DNA from: Lepidodermella squamata
Taxonomy: Eukaryota > Animalia > Gastrotricha
Assembly: GCA_047495785.1 (NCBI GenBank)
Contig: JBLDXI010000019.1
Location: forward strand, 186,001 to 250,000
Reading direction: 5' to 3'
DNA length: 64,000 bases
Position numbers and translations under genes: made by a program. This document shows positions 46,574 through 63,549 of the stretch, piece by piece; position 1 is the stretch's first letter; each line of letters opens with the position of its first letter. The notes below the pieces were generated by a model. The model was not told the origin of the DNA. It saw nothing but the letters and a program-made list of their open reading frames with translations, and searched no databases.

Positions 46574-46703
46574 AATAATCAGTTAAATCGCCAATATTTT
46601 AATGATTTTGCTACAGCATTTGAAATAACCAAGATGTATCATTAAATGAATCGAATGATCAAGAAATATTATGCAGATATGAGCAGAATAATTTTAAAAA
46701 ATT

Positions 46704-47054
46704 CTACAAGCTATCTTCAGGTAGCTCGATTGTGTCAATTATACGCCCGTCAAGTCGGTATATGTGCAGCCGTTCCAAACCTCGCCGACTTCGGCTAATT
46801 ACATTTTGGAGCCAGCGTATCACCTTCTGGAACTTGAATCCCAGAATAGCGACACCAACAATGGCGATGACCGATAGGACAACTGAAACTATAATCAAAA
46901 CGTCAGTTTTCGGCGTATCGCTAGCGTGCGTGGTGGAAGTAGTAATGGAGGTGCCTGTCGTAGAAGTCGTGTCGCAGAATACACAACTGCTGGCACTCAA
47001 TTCAAGGCGGCATTTTATTACAGCATCCTCGCTAAACGGGACACAATCGGCCAT
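46704..47054 (-). CDS. Small type III single-pass membrane protein A (4-Cys N-terminus, Thr stalk, TM)
   Basis: MADCVPF..KCRLEL..CVFC, Thr-rich stalk, 20+ aa hydrophobic helix, basic tail; has a decayed paralogue at ~48790-49006. Confidence 0.65.
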   Translation of the reverse strand: MADCVPFSEDAVIKCRLELSASSCVFCDTTSTTGTSITTSTTHASDTPKTDVLIIVSVVLSVIAIVGVAILGFKFQKVIRWLQNVISRSRRGLERLHIYRLDGRIIDTIELPEDSL

Positions 47055-47253
47055 AATAATAATTTTTTAATTTCTAAAAGGAAACAGGCAGGAATTTTAT
47101 CGATAGATCATTTAATACCGAATGAAATAATAAAATTAACATTATATACTGCGGCAAATAACATGGCAAGTAATATGGCAAGATTATAATATTATGGCAA
47201 TACTTTATTATATGGCAAGATACAAGATACAAAGTAATAAACTAAGAATAATA

Positions 47254-47592
47254 TTATGCCGTAACTTCGGCATTCCCCTCGGCATTCCCCTCGGCCTCTT
47301 CGTTAGAGGCGAACAAGCAAAGCGGAAGGCTTTGCTCAAGCCGAGAATAACGCCTTCGACGGCGAATATATACGACAGAAATGATAACAACGATAACAAT
47401 GATAACAATGATAATGATCCCCGCTGAGATCAGACCAATTTCCAGCTTAGACAATCCCGTCTCAGCTGGAGAAGGCGGCAAGGGGTTTGAGGTTGTAACC
47501 GAGCTCGTTGTTGATGGCGGACATATGTTGCAGTCGACATGCAACAATCGACATCGCTCATAGGCTTCAGCGGACGGTGGAATGCAAGTCAT
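47254..47592 (-). CDS. Small type III single-pass membrane protein B (4-Cys N-terminus, stalk, TM, RRRRR, YxxL)
   Basis: RCRL..DC..CP, GLS..IGLI TM, RRRRRY, LCLFASNE and terminal VTA are all conserved in the paralogue at 49219-~49515. Confidence 0.7.
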   Translation of the reverse strand: MTCIPPSAEAYERCRLLHVDCNICPPSTTSSVTTSNPLPPSPAETGLSKLEIGLISAGIIIIVIIVIVVIISVVYIRRRRRYSRLEQSLPLCLFASNEEAEGNAEGNAEVTA

Positions 47593-48789
47593 TTAATAAA
47601 AATTGAACACTAAAATTTAATAAATGCAATTATTTAACACAAATTTGATTCGATTCGATAAATTTAAATATGCAAGCAATTTCAATTTTTCGTAAATCAC
47701 GATCACTCAGTCCATTCGATTTTCTAGTCCCTCGCATTCTCCAAGTGCACACTTTTCGGCCCTTACATTTTTCTATATAAGCTATTTTTCTATAAATTCT
47801 TAAGCTCCAAATTGAGCTGGGTTCCGTCCGCTATTTCAATCTTTGAGAAGTGTATGTGTATTCACGGCCGTTGTTCTCGCATGTTATAAATCAACTGCGC
47901 GAACTTATTCCATTTTCAAAAATGCGGAAACAATTCTACCATCAAAATTGCATACAAAAGCATATCCAGACCTGTGATGCTTGTCACATGGAATCGATTT
48001 TTCGTTTAGAGAATCGAAACCTTGGCAAACTCCTGGCAAGCTGAACTACTGAACTTCTCGTAGCCGGACGAAAAGGACGAAGCTGACGCGTAATATGCAG
48101 ACGCGTTTTGGACGAAGCTACTGACTGGACTACTAAAAATTCCGAAGTCCGGCCGAAGTCAGGACTTGGAATAGTCTGGCCTGGTTCTCCACATGACAGT
48201 TGTCATGAAACGCGACAGTTGTCGAAGCAGTTGAGGAATTCAAGCGGGGCTTTATAAGCGCAAAGAAAAGACGTTTTCTCCACATCAGCCGCTAATGTTT
48301 TCGCGCATCACTGGCCCCGGTGAAGAAATCTGAAAATTGGGCACAAATCCTGTAGTATATCGGATTGCGGAAATGTCTCCGATTGGCCATGGAAATTCCG
48401 TTTATCTAACACATCGAGTACATCTGAGTTTCTGAATTCGATTATACCGACTAATTTTTTTTTCTTTTCCAACACAATGAGGAAGACTAAATCAGACTAA
48501 TACTGATACAAAAACCAAGCTCGCCTTTTACGGCATGTGTGACTATCAGTCAGACTTGAACAGGAACTCTCTTCTTGATTCGATGAAGCGTGGTGATTGA
48601 ACCCAAGCTCGCATTTTACGCTCTCTGTGCGATTTTCAATTTGACTAGTAGAACAGGAACTCCCAGGAGTTGAATGATTTCGATAAAAACGAGAGAGAGA
48701 GATTTCATCTCTGTTGACTCAGGTAACCAAAGTTTACAATTGCAGGGGAAGTAGCAGTGGAAGTTGAAACGACAAAAACGACCAATAGA

Positions 48790-49006
48790 TTTTTCGTCAG
48801 TTTTCGGCGTATCGGCAGCGGGTGTGGTGGGTGTTGTGGTAGAAACCAGGCTAGAAGTCAGGCTAGGCGAGGTTACTGCGCCGGACGTGGTGGAAACACC
48901 AGGCTCTGTGATGGGAGTCGCCCCATTGCAGAAATTATCACAGTTGTCTCACAATTCAAGGCGGCATTTTACCAGGTCGTCAAAACTAAATGACACGCAA
49001 GGCATT
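48790..49006 (-). pseudogene. Pseudogene copy A' of small membrane protein A
   Basis: Minus strand MPCVSFSFDDLVKCRLEL*DNCDNFC...ADTPKTD matches A (KCRLEL, DTPKTD) but has an in-frame TGA and loses the TM. Confidence 0.7.
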
Positions 49007-49218
49007 TGAGAATGTAATACGAGATTGAATGTAATATCTAAAAAAACGAAAATAATTCAATTATTTATGGTTTAATAATATTTATAATAATATTTCAATA
49101 ATATATATCATTTTTTGCACGAATTAAGGAACAATTCTTCGAAAAATTATTGTTAAGTTACAGGCAAGTAACAGGCAAGGCCATAAAAAACTAGGTAAAA
49201 ACAAAGCCGATGTTTTGA

Positions 49219-49515
49219 TCAGGCTGTTACAGCATTCTCATCGGCAGCGCCTTGTTCGTTCGACGCGAACAAGCACAATTGAATTGTAGATTGATGATGT
49301 TGATCGATAGGGGCATAACGACGCCTGCGCCGACAAATGACGATTACAGCCCCTGTCGCGGCCACGACTGCTAACAAAAGCACTACCCCCCCGCATATTA
49401 GACCAATCAACATCGGGGTTGAAAGGCCAGGCGGCACATTGTTGGCTGGCGACGTTGTCGGGTTAAAGGCGGGGCATAGACCCGAACAATCGAGATTGAA
49501 TAAACGGCAACGTCG
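49219..49515 (-). pseudogene. Copy B' of small membrane protein B, 5'-truncated at the retroelement junction
   Basis: Homology to B stops just upstream of RCRL, where GC-rich retroelement sequence begins; no ATG-initiated N-terminus equivalent to MTCIPP. Confidence 0.6.
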
Positions 49516-52500
49516 CTGGCTGGCAGATATGAAGAGGCTCCACGAAACCCCGCCAGGCGACCAGCTCACCCCCGCTCCGGCTAAGTCCGACCAAGAAGCG
49601 CAGATACTATGCGGGAAATTCTTGGTTTCTGCAAAGCACTGCTCCTACAAACTTGCATTTCGGGCTATGGGGCGCCGGTCGGAAAGAGATGATGCTACCA
49701 TGAAAGAGGTCGCCAAGCCGTTCAGCCTGAATGATGCCGCTTGTACGGAGGTTTTTCGTCCCCGCATTGCAGCTGCGGCCCACCGGGCTTTCACTGAACT
49801 CCAGCAGCTGCATGACGATGCGGATGTCTACAAAGCTATGACTGAATTTGAGGACTTCCGGAATGCCTTGAAGCTTGTCGCTAGACCGGACGACGTGGTC
49901 CTGCGTGCTTACACTTGGCTACATGACAAAAAGGGCGCCGCTAAATGGCCGATGTCTGGAATCCACTTTGCAGCTGGGCACTGGCCCACCAGCGCGAGAC
50001 CTGATTTACCTGGCTTGTCGCCGGAGGAGATCTTCGGCCTCGACCTCGGTCTGCCAATTGGGCAGTTCCGTGCTGCCAAACCGACGGCAGAGTCCGAGAT
50101 CCTCCAGCTGTTCGTCGAGCATGTTGACCGCGTTATCCACGACGCCTCACTTATGAAGGCGGCTGATGCTGCAGCTCTCCATGACACTATGGAATCAACG
50201 TTGGAGCTCTCTCGCGACTTGTCACCTGGTCAGAACCCGCGTACTGCACAAACCGCGCAGGACTATCCCGCGCCTGGCACTGGCTCTACTGCGCCGGCCC
50301 CTCCGCACCCCCCGCCTGGTCAACAACAGCAGGTCACGCTTGGCCACCCCGGACAGGATTTGACCGTACCGGGGATCGGCCCTGCTGCACCGGCACAGCC
50401 TACCCAGCGACCCCGCGCTCAGCCCGACAAGACTGCAGCCACCCCGCCGGCTCCCTTGCGTACCTTCGCGTTCACTCCACTGAAGAACGTCACGGCACCG
50501 CCACCAACAGGCAACGGCAAAGGTAGGTCTACTCTCACTTGGACTGACCTCGTTCAATATCACACCCATAGTGGTAACACTTCTGTCGTGAATAGTCTTA
50601 GCTACTTACTATCCACCCCTAACAGCTACTGGGCTTGGGAAGTCGTGCCTTACATGGCGCCGCCTGACGGCAGAAACACTATAGTCTGTATTCGGCTAAA
50701 GACTGAATTACTGTGTGGGTGTAGCGATACGCCCTTTGCAAACACACACTCGGCCTTGACACGCCACCTCGCAGACCGCCACCCCGGTCACTTGTGGGAG
50801 TTGGAATTCTCGTTTGATAACATATGGGCCGCGTTCTATCCTGGGGAGCTGATACCCAGCTTCTACCAAGAGCGTGACGCCGCAGCGGGGGTTAACTTCA
50901 ACCTTTCGGCTAAAAATCAGCGGCTTCTACGCCAATTCGGGATCATTGATCTGACTGACTCCGTCAGACCATCGCTACTGCGATTACTAGGAAAAGGCCT
51001 TAAGTTTGTCCCTCGAGTGAGGGCCGAACAACTACGCCGGTATCACCAACTACTTGGTTTTGCGGCGACCAATGGTGTCCATGTTTCCCAGCGCTTGCGT
51101 CGCATCGCCTTCTCCCGTATATCCGCACTGGGCAGGGAAACCCCACCACCCCGCCTTCCGCGGGGCGTGGTGCTCACAAGGAGTGACAAAAGCAATATTC
51201 TCATAGTAGACAGCGCCGCTCGGTACGCAGCCATTGGCGAGGACTTCCTTAGCGACCGGAACATGTGGCAGCCCGTCAGTGACGACGGTTACGACTCTTT
51301 CGTTTCCGACCTACAAGACCTATGTAGTGAGTTGTACCGGACTAACAGCTGGTTCCGCCTTCACCATGAACAGGTGGTTCCGGCTATCACTAACCCTCGA
51401 CTTAAATGCATGTACTTCAACTACAAAACCCACAAGCCGCTGAATGCCCATGGCTGGCCAAAGGTGAGGCCTATCACAGATGGCCTTAAGACTTACACCT
51501 CCGGCCTCGACCGTGTACTGAGCTTGCTGATTGGTGGCACCCGCTTTCGGCAGGGTGAACACCACTTGCGCAACCTAATAGCGAACCGTACTCCAATATG
51601 GAATAACCTAAATACCGTTGCAAAGGATACCATCCAGTTTATTGCACGTCTCAGGTCTGTTCACCTACGTGACCCCGACCGCGAGACCTTCTTGATGTCG
51701 GCTGACATAAACGACATGTATAATCAGGTTCCGCTTGATGAGGCCGTCGTGGCGGTCCGATGGTACCTTGATGAGTTTCACAGGCTACCAGGGGAAGCTA
51801 TTCTCCCAGTGAGCCAACTGACTGAACTCGTCCTGAGGCACAATACAGTGTCCTTCAACGGGAAATTCTATAAACAAATACGCGGTCTCGCTATGGGGGG
51901 TAATATATCCCCGCCAGTCGCCATCTGCTGGCTCTACTACAAGGAGCGCTGGCTTTCCCTTGGCACTGGGGCATTGTTCACAACGCGGTTTCTTGATGAC
52001 ATTTTCTCCATCTCCCACATGCGCGAGGGTCTACAGCACTACCTGGATTCCTATGAGAGTAGTCACCCCAACATACGGATCACGGCTGACATTGCCGTCG
52101 ACTCCCAACACTACTTGGACGTGGCGGTTCGCCGTTCCGGCGACAGGTTTCTCACTGCACTGCATGTTAAACCCACTGATAACCTCGCGCTACTCCATGG
52201 CGATTCAAACCACCCGGTGCACGTTTTCACGGGCATTATGCGCGGACAGATACTGCGGTTTCTGCGGATCTGTCAGACACACCAGGCCTTCATGACGGCC
52301 TGCCTGCAGCTCGGCCTGCGCTTACGTCAGCGGGGCTACAGCTGGCAGGAGTTTGTTGTGGCACTGCGTCAAGTGTGCAGGGAGCGGAGCGCTCTTGCAT
52401 GGCCTTTCACGAGACCACGCCGCCCATACAGGCCCCTCCGGGACACATGCGTGGTCACCTTTAGCAGGACATTACTTCCAATCCTGCGACACATCGGGCA

Positions 52501-52573
52501 GCGAATACCCCTCACGTACAGACTGGATAGGACCATAAGCCAGCGTTACAGACGCTCGAATTTCCGACTATAA
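49515..52573 (+). CDS. PLE polyprotein: helical N-terminal domain, Pro-rich linker, zinc-finger-like module, reverse transcriptase
   Basis: Continuous ORF to TAA 52573; CGC..TRHLADRH module precedes the RT motifs; the true start is uncertain. Confidence 0.85.
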
Positions 52574-52754
52574 CCACTTGTTTTACTTTCAGGTGGGACT
52601 GCTGGACGCCAGTAGTGGCCAACCCGTTTGTGGTGGACGTGTGCGACACGACAGACTATTAAACTACTAATGGCTCATCTCTGTTTTTATGAAACATTTT
52701 GTGGAGTTGAATAAAACTGATATCGCTCGTTACTGCCTCTTGCCACGTTGACAG

Positions 52755-53227
52755 GTAGAGTCACCCTGCCTTTGGGCAGAAGCGCAGTTCGCTGTTCCAA
52801 CAGAGAATGGGAACTTCCGGAATCGGGTGTTCCCAGCCAGTTTGCCGGCTTCCCCCGGCCAGTCGACCCCGAGTCCGAGGGCGGCCGTGCTACCGGTCAA
52901 CACAGCTGGTGGCTGACCATCTGGTCCGAAAAGCGGAGGGTTCCCTTTTTCCGCCTCGAGCCAGAAAAGCTCATCTGCGGTTTCCGTCAATGCAGTTTTA
53001 CTGCTCGACGGATCTACGGCATCTACCTACACTATGTGGCCAAGCATCGCAAGGCTTGTTGCGTACTGCGCAATTTCTGGAACATTATTGTACAACAGAC
53101 GTGGCGGAAGAAGTCTCAGAACACCCCAGATACAGTCTCCTGGCCGGAATGCTGGTGCGCCGTCATCTATGGCTACGAAGCAAAGCGCCTAGCCCGACGG
53201 GGTGACCCGGACAATTCTAGCGACTGA
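52755..53227 (+). CDS. PLE accessory exon encoding a C2H2 zinc finger
   Basis: CGFRQC..YLHYVAKH; no ATG in frame; acceptor GACAG at 52754; AATAAA at 53271. Confidence 0.55.
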
Positions 53228-53585
53228 ACACTAACTGTGCTTGCATCAACTGGGTGCTCTGGCGTTTGTTAATAAAACATTGTTAGCGACATAGTACCCT
53301 TCGATGAGTGGCACCCACTTTTTATTTCGACGACACTACTCCGCACCCTATGGAGGCACTGACGCTCCTCCAGGACACGGGCCCCATGATGGCAGGTCAC
53401 TTACCCAACGACCGTTTGTCACTCCGAGGCACTGCCTAGCTGGCCTTAGCGGCCATACGGCCCGCGGCACTGTCTGCAGGCTACCTTTCGGGCCCCACTA
53501 GCCCGCAAGATGGACGCCATCACCATGGGAACGTCCAGCAATAGGGAGTGCGCGGATGCGTGCGCGGACTGGGCGCACACCACTG

Positions 53586-53626
53586 CCTATAAAAGTACCT
53601 GGCAGGCTCCTTGGGAGCTCAGTCTG
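53586..53626 (+). promoter_or_regulatory. TATA + initiator core promoter in the 3' region of the PLE (pseudo-LTR-like)
   Basis: TATAAAA at 53588-53594 and TCAGT Inr at 53619-53623, canonical ~30 bp spacing; GGCTCC-TTG-GGAGC hairpin between them. Confidence 0.55.
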
Positions 53627-54228
53627 CTTTTTTCAACTTGAAGGAAAGCAGCTTTAAGGGCATCGGGACCACAGGTCTCTAGATGGGTCCACTGGGCCCT
53701 AGCCCTTGGGAATAATTTTCCCCAAAAAAAACGGGCCGTAGCACTGGAACCTTGACGTGGTGGTACCGCTTGACTTGGTGGCTGCCCCAGCAAACTTTGT
53801 GGGATACTCCGAGCCATCAGTTGCCTAATACCAGTGCATCTACCGGTTAGACTACCGGTTTGGGAAAACTTACTGACTCCCATTGTATCCTGCCACGCTA
53901 CCTAGTAATGCGTGGTGTGCTACCCCAGCCCTCACTACCGGTGCCAGATGTCTGTGTGCTTGTCGTATAGGGCTCAGATGAGATTGCTTGTAGCGGGAAC
54001 ACCCACTACACCCAGTACGGGTTCTCCGGACTGGCTCCCCAAAAAAGACCCGAGCGACCCGAGCGCGACCCGAGTCCGATTTAGACGACTTGCACTGTAG
54101 TTGTTTTCGGTTTTATAGGTAACGCAAGAACATTGAGAAAGTCCAAAGATTGCATGCAAAAAATATTGCGGGACCTTCATCATAATGGCATTATAAATCA
54201 TATTCATGTGAGATTATAATAATGTTCG

Positions 54229-55733
54229 TCATTGCACAACATCATTTGCCTGGGCGGACGGCTGGGCTTCCTGTCTAACTACATATAAATTAACTCCGGT
54301 TAGAAATGCCATAAATTGACGAAGATGGGTTATCCTAGCAACTACGGTTGCCATATTAGCGGTAGCAAAATTGCGCAAGGCAGTTAGCTGTTCAGCGGTA
54401 TATTGTATACTTTGATACTCAAATTCTGCTTCAGAAATATAAGGAAAAGCAATGAGTCTGGTAGGCGGCGTATCTATTCTGCCTTCTCCTGCAAGACCTA
54501 CAGCTACCACGCTGGGAACTTGTTCAGTCTCTACAGCTGTAGGGGCTTTAGATTTGGGGCTAGCGCCAACTGTCGCATCGTCAAGACCATTCCCAACTAC
54601 GGCAACTCCAGGGCCAGTCTCCACGGATTTTTTTCCAGTTATTAGGGCTAGGCTCATATAAATTGTATTCTTTAAGCTGGAATAAACTAAAAAGGTAAAA
54701 CTTGGCACGAAAAATAACGCTGTATGTTGTGGCTTGAATGAGGTTCCGTAATATATTAAAAAAAAGCCCGTTATGATCAAAACAACGTTTATCGCCATTT
54801 TCGGCCTACTCGAGACCAAAGGACCGTTTATCCAAGAAATAACAAACGCAGAGCAAGAACACAAAAATATTAAGGCGTATAAAATATTATGTGCATTATC
54901 AATCGTATAATTTAGGTATTCAAAAGAGGCATATGATCCAGCGATAAATGACAGCAACACATAGGCAACAGGCCTTTTAGTATTGTACAATTGTGATATA
55001 AAATAAAACGCAGCAGCTATCCCCGCTAAACTTCCGCTCATCGAACAAAAACTATAATAAGCTAGATTCGTTTCAGTTAGCCATTTCGATGCTACAACCA
55101 TTAGAACACCTGTTAGCGTGACAATGAAATTATTAAAATCAAAATAACTTTCAGCCAATTGCAGATCGACAGTCGAATTCAAGGGGCATATAGCAATGCT
55201 GTAGTAATCAAAGGCCGACACAAGCGCCGTCTCGAAGGCATCTTTATCGTCCTCGTCTGATGCATCAAATAAGCTTGGTAGAAATAGTGACATAATCTGA
55301 AGAATGCCGGGCGAACGACGGTTTGCAGTTACTGCACAGCATCTAGCAGCGAGCTTTTCAGAGCAATCGTTGCCAGTATAAATCTCCAATTTAGCCACAT
55401 CTTGTATTGATGCTGGTATTATTCGGTACTGGCATAAAGTTTTTCATTAAATATCCAAAAGGCAAACCAAAACCTTACCTTGTTTATCCAAAATAAATAA
55501 TTAAGTTGCCATAATTCCGACTTAGTTAAGCACACTTGAGAAGGGATCGGCGGCGAATAGTCTGAAAAGGAAATCTGGTATGCCCCATCCTCAACGAGGG
55601 CCCACGGCGGAACACTAATTTCTTCGAAATTTTCGCAGTTGTTGGTTGTTAAACAGAATGCCTCAGATAGAATTGCTGAGCTCCAAATTATCGTTAGAAC
55701 ATTAAACTCTGCGTGAAATTTGCGGTATGCCAT
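54229..55733 (-). CDS. Divergent NEMP/TMEM194-like nuclear envelope membrane protein (2 exons)
   Basis: Signal-like N-terminus; intron ~55430-55478 joins in frame. FDF..F....G, YYS, GPL...R and YISEAEFEYQSIQYTAEQLTALRNF..VVARI....FMAFLTG parallel the NEMP TM domain and conserved C-terminal region (LLTEEEY..Q...T.KAL.ELR.FC..VSRI..P.RFA.F..G). Confidence 0.75.
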
Positions 55734-61148: not shown

Positions 61149-61268
61149 ACGCAGAAGCACGCCGGGCTACAACGCCGGTTATTTTTGCGGCAGCCGCACT
61201 GGGCTAAACAGCCGGTTTTGCAGTAGCAACGAACGGCTGTAGCGTCCTGCATGTTTTTCTGGTCGGTC

Positions 61269-61496
61269 GGAGCAGTCGAACCAGCCGGAGCAGTCGAACC
61301 AGCCGGAGCCGGAGCAGTCGAACCAGCCGGAGCAGTCGAACCAGCCGGAGCAGTCGAACCAGCCGGAGCCGGAGCAGTCGAACCAGCCGGAGCCGGAGCA
61401 GTCGAACCAGCCGGAGCCGGAGCAGTCGAACCAGCCGGAGCCGTCGAACCAGCCGGAGCAGTCGAACCAGTCGAAGCAGTCGAACCAGCCGGAGCA
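61269..61496. repeat. GC-rich minisatellite with 18/24-bp units
   Basis: About 11 units of GGAGCAGTCGAACCAGCC, some with an extra GGAGCC. Confidence 0.9.
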
Positions 61497-61619: not shown

Positions 61620-63549
61620 AAACAAAATTAACAAGTATAACAACCGCAACGTCTGGACGCAGCTATCAAGAGATGAGTCATTGCAAAAGGCCACCAATTT
61701 TAATCTGTTCTTCTCACAAGCAGGAAAAATCGTGGCCGAAAGTCTCGGAGGCTGTCTGAACTTCGCAAGACGTAAACGAAGCTCAACGCCGTTTACGTTT
61801 CGACCTGTCTCGGTCACCGATGTCGAAAAAGCGATCGACAAACTGAGTTACAAGGCTACGACCGGGTTCGACGGCATTCCCGAGTGCATCGTGAAGATGG
61901 CAAAGCCTTCAATTGCTCGACATCTCACAGCGCTCTTCAACTTGGCCATTCGAGATGGTGTCTTCATCAGTGATTGGAAAACGGCTATTGTCACACCGCT
62001 GCATAAATCCGGATCAAAGGCTGAGGTTGGGAATTTTAGGCCGATTTCGATCACTTCACCGCTAGCTCGTACGTTCGAGCGTTGCCTGGCAACACAGCTG
62101 AAAGATCATTTGCGAGCGATCAAATTCTTAACACCGGCACAACACGGATTTCGTCAATACCATTCGACTGACACCTGCGTGGCATCGTTCACCGAACGCT
62201 GGCGACATCTACTTGACAAAGGAAACGTGGTTGGAGCCGTGTCGATCGACTTATCCAAAGCCTTCGACACGCTCCACCACGATGGGATTATCGAATCTCT
62301 CCGATCCGCTGGTGTAACGGAAAAGTCAATTCGCCTATTGATAAACTACTTGAGCAATCGCCGCCAAACCACGAAAATCAACGGCGAAGCATCCCCGTTC
62401 GAGTCAATTGATTGCGGTGTGCCACAAGGATCGGTCCTTGGGCCACTCATGTTTACAATTTATGTAAACGACCTGCCTTTGATTTTAAGGAGATGCGGTA
62501 TAGCACAATACGCCGACGACATTACAATTTTTTACGGATCGAAGAACATCAACGAACTCCACTCAGTTCTGCAACTGGAACTTGACAGGGTATGCGCATG
62601 GCTAAAACAGAACAGCCTCGCAGTAAATGGGAAAAAATCGCAATTCATGCTTCTCAAACCACACCTCTCGACAGCGCCCGATTTCAAGGTCACAATCGGA
62701 GGAGTTGCGATAAAGCCGTCAGAAATCATGGATACCCTTGGTTTCAAAATTGACAACAAGCTACAATTCGATGAGCACGTCGAGATGGCCAAAGGCAAAG
62801 CCCGAAAAGGCCTGTTTGCTCTCAAACAAGCTGTCAACGCTGGAATCGATCGCAAAACTGCTGTTATGATGACAAATGGCCTCGTCGTCAGCCATCTGAA
62901 TTATGGCGACCTCACCCTCGGACAGGCCTCAAAATCGACTCGCGACAAACTGCAATCGTCGCAGGATCGAGCTATCAAAATCATATACGGCGCTCATCCA
63001 TTGGCGGATCCGGCCCCGCTGCGGCATCGACTTGGGTGGCTAACAGTCGGCCAGAAGCATGCGATGCACCTATGTACATTCATGTGGAAGAGCCTGAACA
63101 ATATGGCGCCGGATGAATTCACGTCGATGTTTAAGCTGAACGATCGCAGCCACGGCTACAGCTGCCGTAATTTCGAACCCATGTTAAAACCGACCTACAC
63201 ATCCGAGCGAGGCCAACTAAGCATGTCGTACCGTGGCCCGCACTTGTGGAATCAAATGCCTTCGAGCGTTCACGAAGCGGAGTCAGCAAAGGCGTGTCGC
63301 CAAGCAGCTTATCTACACTACTACAACATTAATGCCGCTCTGCTCTGATTGTTGAATATTCATATATTTTCATATTTTTCATGTTATGTTGATCATTGCA
63401 TTGATTTCGATAGTGATCCCGATCAGTCTACTATTTATGCTATTTCGATTTTCAATTTTGTTGTTGTCTTTACTTTTCTATTGATCACTTGTCTGAGCTG
63501 TCCTCTTCTGGGCGTTATGGCTCTTTAAATAAATAAATAAATAAATAAC
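61620..63549 (+). mobile_element. 5'-truncated CR1/L2-group (L2/Crack/Daphne-like) LINE with intact RT and (TAAA)n tail
   Basis: ORF 61681..63348: KATTGFDGI, NFRPIS, QHGFR, DLSKAFD, GVPQGSVLGP, YADD; no APE domain; (TAAA)n at ~63526-63548. Confidence 0.9.

What the first reader, a model, noticed from the sequence alone, without database searches (positions are those of the whole stretch)
50522..53276. Endonuclease-less Penelope-like element wired for three alternatively spliced products from one donor
Seen: a strong donor AAAG|GTAGGT at 50522/50523 (phase 1) sits exactly at the end of the Pro-rich N-terminal region. Two acceptors lie downstream of the RT stop, TTTTACTTTCAG|GT (52592) and GTTGACAG|GT (52754), each followed by its own AATAAA (52710, 53271). 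Splicing to 52754 is in frame with the ATG-less C2H2 ORF; splicing to 52592 adds GGTAGRQ-stop. Established: canonical PLEs encode RT plus GIY-YIG in one ORF; EN-less PLEs (Athena, Coprina) are mostly telomere-associated. Inference: this element makes (i) N-term+ZnF+RT, (ii) N-term only and (iii) N-term+alternative ZnF, a gag/pol-like expression scheme I do not recognise from described PLEs.
Basis: partly seen in the sequence, partly recalled or inferred. Interest (0 to 1): 0.85.

Follow-up and report, generated by a model that had tools for sequence, protein, structure and literature searches.

The report
Retroelement reverse transcriptase nested inside ORF1
A jumping gene that lacks a DNA-cutting enzyme carries its reverse transcriptase inside an optional intron of its other gene, so one start probably gives a reverse-transcriptase fusion, a zinc-finger protein and perhaps a short form; five distant relatives share the layout, but no RNA data could be checked.

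Summary
All sites described are present. The element is an endonuclease-less Penelope-like retroelement. The donor at 50523 and acceptor at 52592 rank 2/231 and 1/236 under a host-trained matrix. Acceptor 52754 scores weakly, but it is the first AG of a Met-free zinc-finger ORF conserved downstream of RT in five lineages whose RTs are 33-38% identical. All six have a phase-1 donor at the same boundary; in five the first AG is in frame. In outgroup elements this finger is the C-terminus of one uninterrupted ORF1, so product (iii) probably rebuilds ORF1 around the RT. Product (ii) is less secure. Correction: the first 59 codons of the 1078-aa ORF are antisense host gene. This copy (about 49513-54240) interrupts a host gene and is probably 5'-truncated and promoterless. 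Host spliced-leader trans-splicing is a live rival. This scan already noted the two-product layout three times on other DNA of this genome; ORF1 restoration and the two wirings of the short form are my additions.

The parts
49513..54240 (+). Whole insertion (GC-rich element to about 54090, then 150 AT-rich bases of unknown origin); no target-site duplication; probably 5'-truncated inside ORF1
   Evidence: Rejoining 49512/54241 or 49513/54242 gives the best match to an intact host paralog; GC profile
49529..50522 (+). Shared N-terminal exon: first element-derived ATG, predicted-globular part, then Pro/Gln/Ala-rich linker (331 codons); frame is open back to the junction
   Evidence: no Pfam hit; not alignable to relatives' N-termini
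50523..50528 (+). Phase-1 splice donor GTAGGT, read through in the RT product
   Evidence: Rank 2 of 231; phase-1 GT at the same boundary in 5 of 5 relatives
50523..52573 (+). RT exon: N-terminal zinc finger, DK motif, PLE-type RT core and thumb, no endonuclease
50714..50782 (+). First zinc finger (C-x-C...H-x4-H) at the head of the RT exon
   Evidence: Both His conserved in six lineages; weak profile match to the second finger (hhalign E 8e-5, probability 61%)
51989..52000 (+). Catalytic FLDD motif
52581..52615 (+). Acceptor A1 (AG at 52591-52592) and 7-codon tail ending in TAG
   Evidence: Rank 1 of 236; counterpart in L002 only
52710..52715 (+). Proximal poly(A) signal, inside the intron that leads to A2
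   Evidence: AATAAA within 200 nt of the RT stop in 4 of 5 relatives
52716..52754 (+). Branch-point-like CTGAT and acceptor A2 (AG at 52753-52754)
   Evidence: weak matrix score
52755..53227 (+). Met-free zinc-finger exon (WW...PF...C-x4-C-x12-H-x4-H; finger at 52976-53047)
   Evidence: Homologous ORF after RT in 5 relatives (E 5e-17 to 0.11); AlphaFold mean pLDDT 81.6 for 52841-53140; homologous to ORF1 C-termini of outgroups
53271..53276 (+). Distal poly(A) signal with U-rich downstream tract
53588..53594 (+). TATA box in the 3' non-coding region, probably the promoter for a downstream tandem copy
   Evidence: TATA followed by a hammerhead motif at the same place in L001
49222..49512 (-). 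3' part of the interrupted host gene (small Ser/Thr-rich single-pass membrane protein); its antisense strand supplies the first 59 codons of the 1078-aa ORF
   Evidence: 40% identity over 106 aa to paralog 47592-47257, E 4e-9
54241..54272 (-). 5' part of the same interrupted host exon

Best explanation
This is one copy of a clade of endonuclease-less Penelope-like retroelements whose RT lies inside an optional intron of ORF1. One pre-mRNA is processed in competing ways (all inferred from DNA). If the donor is read through and the RNA is cleaved at the proximal poly(A) site, the product is N-term+finger+RT (1014 aa from ATG 49529). If the donor is spliced to 52754, removing 2.2 kb that include the RT and the proximal poly(A) site, the product is N-term+linker+finger (488 aa), equivalent to the ORF1 protein that outgroup elements encode in one piece and probably the nucleic-acid-binding partner of the RT. 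Splicing to 52592 gives a 338-aa finger-less form (less sure, about 0.5). An unspliced RNA that passes both poly(A) sites must be the template for copying. The splice-versus-polyadenylate choice would set the ORF1:RT ratio in place of a frameshift or read-through. This particular copy inserted without target duplication into a host gene and probably lacks a promoter.
For: Shown: phase-1 donor at the N-term/RT boundary in 6 of 6 lineages. In four of them it lies in the last two codons of the N-terminal ORF (chance 5-11% each). Three of those four have a phase-1 acceptor 63-128 nt later that restores the RT head. Zinc-finger ORF conserved after RT in 6 of 6; first AG in frame in 5 of 6 (P about 0.047); no Met at all in the window, and none before the conserved WW motif in L003. 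Profile of this exon hits the ORF1 C-termini of L006 and L007 (20.0 and 23.5 bits; best of 200 shuffles 11.7 and 5.4), and the reverse profile hits 5 of 6 exons above all shuffles. L008 and L012 also end ORF1 in a similar finger. The six form a clade (SH-aLRT 99) inside an endonuclease-free clade (100).
Against: A2 has a poor matrix score. L003's first AG is out of frame (an in-frame one lies 53 nt further) and L005 has no in-frame RT acceptor, though that contig is frameshifted. L008's finger is not above shuffles with the exon profile. N-termini are too diverged to align, so 'same protein as ORF1' rests on architecture plus the finger. A 2.2-kb intron is unusual where host introns in this window are 45-62 nt. 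The branching order among the endonuclease-less subclades is unresolved, so ancestry is not polarised.
Confidence: 0.68

Rival explanations
1. Operon-style expression: the downstream zinc-finger ORF is cut from a polycistronic RNA at the proximal poly(A) site and receives a spliced leader at 52754, starting from a leader AUG or a near-cognate codon. The donor at 50523 is only the scar of a lost short intron.
For: Stop, AATAAA, short gap, AG, ORF is the classic operon layout. Earlier scan notes report spliced-leader trans-splicing in this genome (not tested by me). Relatives have TAG acceptors just before the ORF1 ATG, and L010 has TAG|ATG at its RT. Flatworm leaders end in AUG (own knowledge). 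In L001 and L004 the RT exon itself begins with GT, so intron loss would leave such a donor-like junction.
Against: The acceptors are phase 1, matching the cis donor, whereas a leader ending in AUG needs phase 0. The window's ORF has no Met. Outgroups fuse the finger to the N-terminal domain. A1 in the window and L002 needs a working donor.
Confidence: 0.17
2. Only two proteins are made. A1 is not a terminal-exon acceptor: it is a recursive (ratchet) site CAG|GT that helps remove the long intron in two steps, or part of the U-rich poly(A) context.
For: A1 is followed directly by GTGGGA, which would regenerate a donor; host introns are tiny. Stops just after donors are expected in AT-rich introns. 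This rival concerns product (ii) only and is compatible with (i) and (iii).
Against: In L002 the same acceptor is followed by AT, not GT, and gives a 16-codon tail before AATAAA. A1 occurs in both read-through lineages and no comparably strong AG occurs in the four intron lineages. L001 and L003 use non-consensus GTTGA/GTTAA donors that encode a stop at once.
Confidence: 0.35
3. The splice signals are chance; the element is an ordinary two-ORF endonuclease-less element and the downstream ORF is a silent relic.
For: A2 scores poorly; there is no RNA support; absence of Met in 157 codons has P about 0.125 by itself.
Against: The ORF is open and homologous in six lineages at 33-38% RT identity, folds confidently, and has its own AATAAA in five; donor phase is the same in all six.
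Confidence: 0.06

Closest known systems
Athena elements and Terminons (bdelloid rotifer endonuclease-less PLEs)
   Same: RT without GIY-YIG, a separate N-terminal ORF1, conserved introns, ORF1 that can be separated from RT by a frameshift, reverse-complement telomeric repeats and hammerheads (PMC8557442, Fig. 1 legend and Introduction; PMC6431247). Relatives here have CCCTAA tracts and hammerhead motifs.
   Different: I found no description of an RT nested in an ORF1 intron with a downstream zinc-finger terminal exon. The two primary papers (PMC5850863, PMC1890498) were not held, so this comparison is incomplete. Clade membership was not tested against labelled Athena sequences.
Coprina elements
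   Same: Endonuclease-less PLE, mostly at chromosome ends; read-through members also have one long N-term+RT ORF.
   Different: Described as one ORF, sometimes two (PMC13159263); no spliced zinc-finger exon reported in what I read.
Ty1/Copia subgenomic gag RNA (EVD)
   Same: Alternative splicing coupled to premature polyadenylation sets the ratio of structural to catalytic protein (PMC5580714).
   Different: LTR retrotransposon; the short RNA ends early and no exon beyond RT is used. It resembles product (ii), not (iii).
Retroviral env splicing and the IgM secreted/membrane switch (own knowledge)
   Same: One 5' donor, catalytic ORF removed as an intron (env); an intronic poly(A) site competing with splicing to a distal exon while the N-terminus is shared (IgM).
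   Different: env does not share gag's N-terminal domain; IgM is a host gene. These are analogies of mechanism only.
Chlamys-3_cRei and Penelope (EN+ PLEs)
   Same: PLEs keep introns through retrotransposition; an alternative 5' intron is documented by long reads in Chlamys-3 (PMC8557442).
   Different: Those introns are in the 5' UTR or trim the N-terminus, and the elements carry an endonuclease.

Membership tests
Penelope-like elements | RT of the PLE type (DK motif, PLE core motifs, thumb) | tested here: met
   Best 150 phmmer hits are PLE-type RTs; 81 of the 158 proteins fetched carry a GIY-YIG domain; motifs
Penelope-like elements | pLTR or tandem arrangement with the promoter in the 3' region | tested here: inconclusive
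   No terminal repeat in this copy; TATA at 53588; L001 and L008 contigs close on themselves
[quoted passage not shown] | GIY-YIG endonuclease fused to RT | tested here: not met
   A profile from 48 PLE endonucleases finds nothing in six frames of the window or in clade loci; positive control L009 scores 45 bits
EN- PLEs (Athena/Coprina type) | No endonuclease | tested here: met
   none of the 19 clade proteins has one
EN- PLEs (Athena/Coprina type) | Reverse-complement telomeric repeats and hammerhead ribozyme | tested here: inconclusive
   Absent in this truncated copy. CCCTAA tracts in L001, L003, L005, L007, L010; hammerhead cores with stems in L001, L004 and the end of L002, not detected by Rfam
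EN- PLEs (Athena/Coprina type) | Location at chromosome ends | tested here: not met
   This copy is inside a host gene and the window has no telomeric tract; L005 and L007 run into CCCTAA arrays
Athena clade or Coprina clade proper | Monophyly with named Athena or Coprina RTs | not testable with these tools
   No labelled reference sequences could be fetched; the tree shows only an endonuclease-free clade
Alternative terminal-exon gene | Observed splice junctions and poly(A) ends | not testable with these tools

The most novel reading that the evidence does not exclude
A whole clade of endonuclease-less, mostly telomeric retroelements has its RT inside an intron of ORF1 after duplicating a zinc-finger exon. 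It uses a splice-versus-polyadenylate switch to make three proteins with one N-terminus. The short form is kept through two different wirings (stop at the donor of a short retained intron, or a dedicated acceptor after the RT stop), which would show selection on all three products.
Probability: 0.4. Interest if true: 0.78.

Novelty: new variant of a known kind. Interest (0 to 1): 0.62.

Why it matters
How endonuclease-less Penelope-like elements, the closest mobile relatives of telomerase, express and balance ORF1 and RT is poorly known. A nested gene would be an unusual answer: the catalytic gene is an intron of the structural gene, and the copied RNA has to escape both splicing and two poly(A) sites. 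It gives exact junctions that one RT-PCR or a long-read library can test. It also warns annotators that ORF finders miss the finger exon's link to ORF1 and, at this locus, add 59 host-derived codons. The score is tempered because RNA proof is lacking, splice-controlled gag/pol ratios are known in Copia, and introns linking ORF1 and RT are known in PLEs.

Tried and rejected
Word-indexed protein searches were blank or missed the close relatives; these blanks carry no weight. DNA scans of metagenome and viral contigs gave no clade member. The ESM Atlas gave only scores under 0.9. Single-sequence AlphaFold of the finger exon failed (pLDDT 40). Fold searches of the good model gave no significant match: best were C2H2 fingers of ARS2/Serrate, SF3A2 and tramtrack at E > 0.1, and VIA Z at most 4.1. 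Rfam found no ribozyme in the window or loci. A hidden GIY-YIG was rejected. A 1078-aa element ORF starting at 49337 was rejected: host DNA. A target-site duplication was rejected. A circularly permuted complete unit with a 47-nt 5'-UTR intron (donor 54208, AG at 49526) was considered but not supported: the frame is open to the junction and the AT-rich leader seen in relatives is missing.

Full report
Observation. Local translation confirms that the donor at 50522/50523 is phase 1, that joining to 52592 adds GGTAGRQ-stop, and that joining to 52754 continues into the 157-codon zinc-finger frame, which has no methionine. I built splice matrices from 22 hand-picked introns of the host PKD-like gene in this window (45-62 nt long; the first seven verified by frame). 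The donor ranks 2 of 231 GT and A1 ranks 1 of 236 AG inside the element. A2 ranks only 152, but it is the first AG after its frame opens, follows 46 AG-free bases and has a branch-point-like CTGAT at -38. The element has two AATAAA, one after each stop.

Boundaries, a correction. The minus strand of 49222-49512 encodes the 3' part of a small membrane-protein gene, 40% identical to an intact paralog at 47592-47257. Its 5' part resumes at 54241, and the best in-frame rejoining is at 49512/54241 or 49513/54242. The insertion is therefore about 49513-54240, antisense to the host gene, with no target duplication. The first 59 codons of the 1078-aa ORF are host sequence. The frame is open up to the junction, and the AT-rich leader and basic N-terminus seen in relatives are missing, so this copy is probably 5'-truncated inside ORF1 and has no promoter of its own. 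Earlier notes call the host probably the gastrotrich Lepidodermella squamata. I did not test this. The window's composition and the scan's piece count fit the published 122-Mb, 157-contig, 43% GC assembly (PMC11660948).

What it is. The RT is of the Penelope type and ends without an endonuclease. A full phmmer scan gave five close relatives at 33-38% identity, then a drop. A GIY-YIG profile finds nothing in six frames of the window or of the clade loci. In the tree the window element and these five form a clade (SH-aLRT 99) inside an endonuclease-free clade (100); the order of subclades is open. Relatives show CCCTAA tracts and hammerhead cores, the marks of telomere-attaching PLEs (PMC8557442). 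This copy has neither. The JGI sample id of L001 occurs in a paper on Sphagnum metagenomes; the hosts of the relatives are unknown.

Comparative test of the splice model. All five relatives (L001-L005) have the order N-terminal ORF, RT, downstream ORF on one strand. The downstream ORF is homologous to the window's (E 5e-17, 9e-14, 1e-7, 0.003, 0.11). All six have a phase-1 GT at the N-term/RT boundary. The window and L002 read through it into RT. L001, L003, L004 and L005 have a stop within two codons. In L001, L003 and L004 a phase-1 AG 63, 128 and 71 nt later restores the conserved RT head, at the position where the window reads through. L005 has no in-frame RT acceptor but is a frameshifted sequence. 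The first AG of the finger frame is phase 1 in five of six (P about 0.047 with element-specific background); in L003 a pyrimidine-rich in-frame AG lies 53 nt further. AATAAA follows the RT stop in five of six and the finger stop in five of six. A strong acceptor just after the RT stop with a short tail exists in both read-through lineages (7 and 16 codons); the four others have no comparable site.

What product (iii) is. In the next tier of relatives (L006, L007, L008, L012) ORF1 is one frame: N-terminal domain, low-complexity linker, then a finger with the same W...C...C...H...H pattern. RT follows in an overlapping frame or after an in-frame stop. The profile of the downstream exon scores L006 and L007 ORF1 C-termini above all 200 shuffles; profile-profile E is 2e-6, probability 89%. 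L008 does not pass this test. So splicing from the donor to A2 would build the protein that outgroups encode in one piece. The finger at the head of the RT exon is a weaker match to the same family (E 8e-5), suggesting exon duplication (inference). L010 and L011 have the RT-head finger but no downstream finger exon. AlphaFold with ten sequences gives a confident helix, beta-beta-alpha finger, helix domain (pLDDT 81.6); structural matches are non-significant C2H2 fingers. Nucleic-acid binding is inferred from the fold class only.

How it most likely works. Shown: sites, phases, homologies, absence of endonuclease. Inferred: a promoter in the 3' region of an upstream tandem copy (TATA at 53588; TATA then hammerhead in L001) drives one pre-mRNA. 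Cleavage at the proximal site without splicing gives the RT fusion. Splicing to A2 removes RT and the proximal site and gives ORF1p. Splicing to A1, or retention of the short intron in the other lineages, gives a finger-less form. Unspliced read-through RNA is the template, consistent with intron retention by PLEs (PMC8557442; PMC3846280). I put (i)+(iii) by cis-splicing at about 0.68 and (ii) at about 0.5.

Rivals. Earlier notes report spliced-leader trans-splicing in this genome, and the layout around A2 looks like an operon junction. This is the main rival (0.17). It does not explain the phase-1 match, the lack of Met, the ORF1 fusion in outgroups or A1. A1 may be a recursive site in this lineage (0.35, affects product ii only). 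Chance is unlikely (0.06).

Comparison and novelty. It works like Copia's splice-and-terminate control of gag versus pol (PMC5580714) and like an alternative-terminal-exon switch. By membership it is an endonuclease-less PLE; assignment to Athena or Coprina was not testable. Known PLE architectures include conserved introns and a frameshift between ORF1 and RT. In the literature searches aimed at this I found no report of an RT nested in an ORF1 intron, but the two primary Athena papers were unavailable. This scan had already noted the two-product layout on three other pieces of this genome (s1-379631, s1-407445, s1-387796); those are unchecked AI notes and not independent proof. Verdict: new variant of a known kind, interest 0.62.

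Limits. Spliced models were searched exon by exon; the joined search was left out.

Noticed in passing
window 7408-27425 (+): Very large PKD1-like gene (laminin-G-like, WSC, kringle, C-type lectin, F5/8, REJ, GPS, PLAT, polycystin channel) with 45-62-nt introns; used only to train splice matrices.
   Followed up: partly
window 46600-49512 (-) and 54241-54272 (-): Tandem duplication, spacing about 1.9 kb, of two small Ser/Thr-rich single-pass membrane protein genes; the retroelement interrupts the second copy of one.
   Followed up: partly
window 49505-49516 and 54234-54245: Similar words CAACGTC and CAACATC at the two junctions, without a true duplication; may reflect microhomology-primed insertion at a break.
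   Followed up: partly
window 54090-54240: 150 AT-rich bases at the 3' end of the insertion, with an acceptor-like TTTTATAG|GT at 54118 and the top-scoring donor of the insert at 54208; origin unknown.
   Followed up: partly
window 53622-53651: Strong hairpin about 30 nt after the TATA box; no ribozyme match.
   Followed up: partly
window 54229-55398 (-): 389-codon frame with a NEMP-family hit (E 2.5e-13) directly beside the insertion.
   Followed up: no
window 61681-63348 (+): Second, unrelated RT ORF (RVT_1 E 5e-34) preceded by an 18-bp coding-like tandem repeat at 61268-61496.
   Followed up: no
L001:1530 and L004:2244: The RT exon begins with GT, so removing the short intron regenerates a donor; the read-through donor of the window and L002 may derive from such an intron loss.
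   Followed up: partly
L008:2743-2745; L006:2174-2325; L007:509-585: Outgroup elements link ORF1 and RT by an in-frame stop (L008) or overlapping frames (L006, L007): three candidate translational couplings in one small clade.
   Followed up: no
L004:1871-1927: Extra 57-nt phase-1 intron inside the N-terminal ORF.
   Followed up: no
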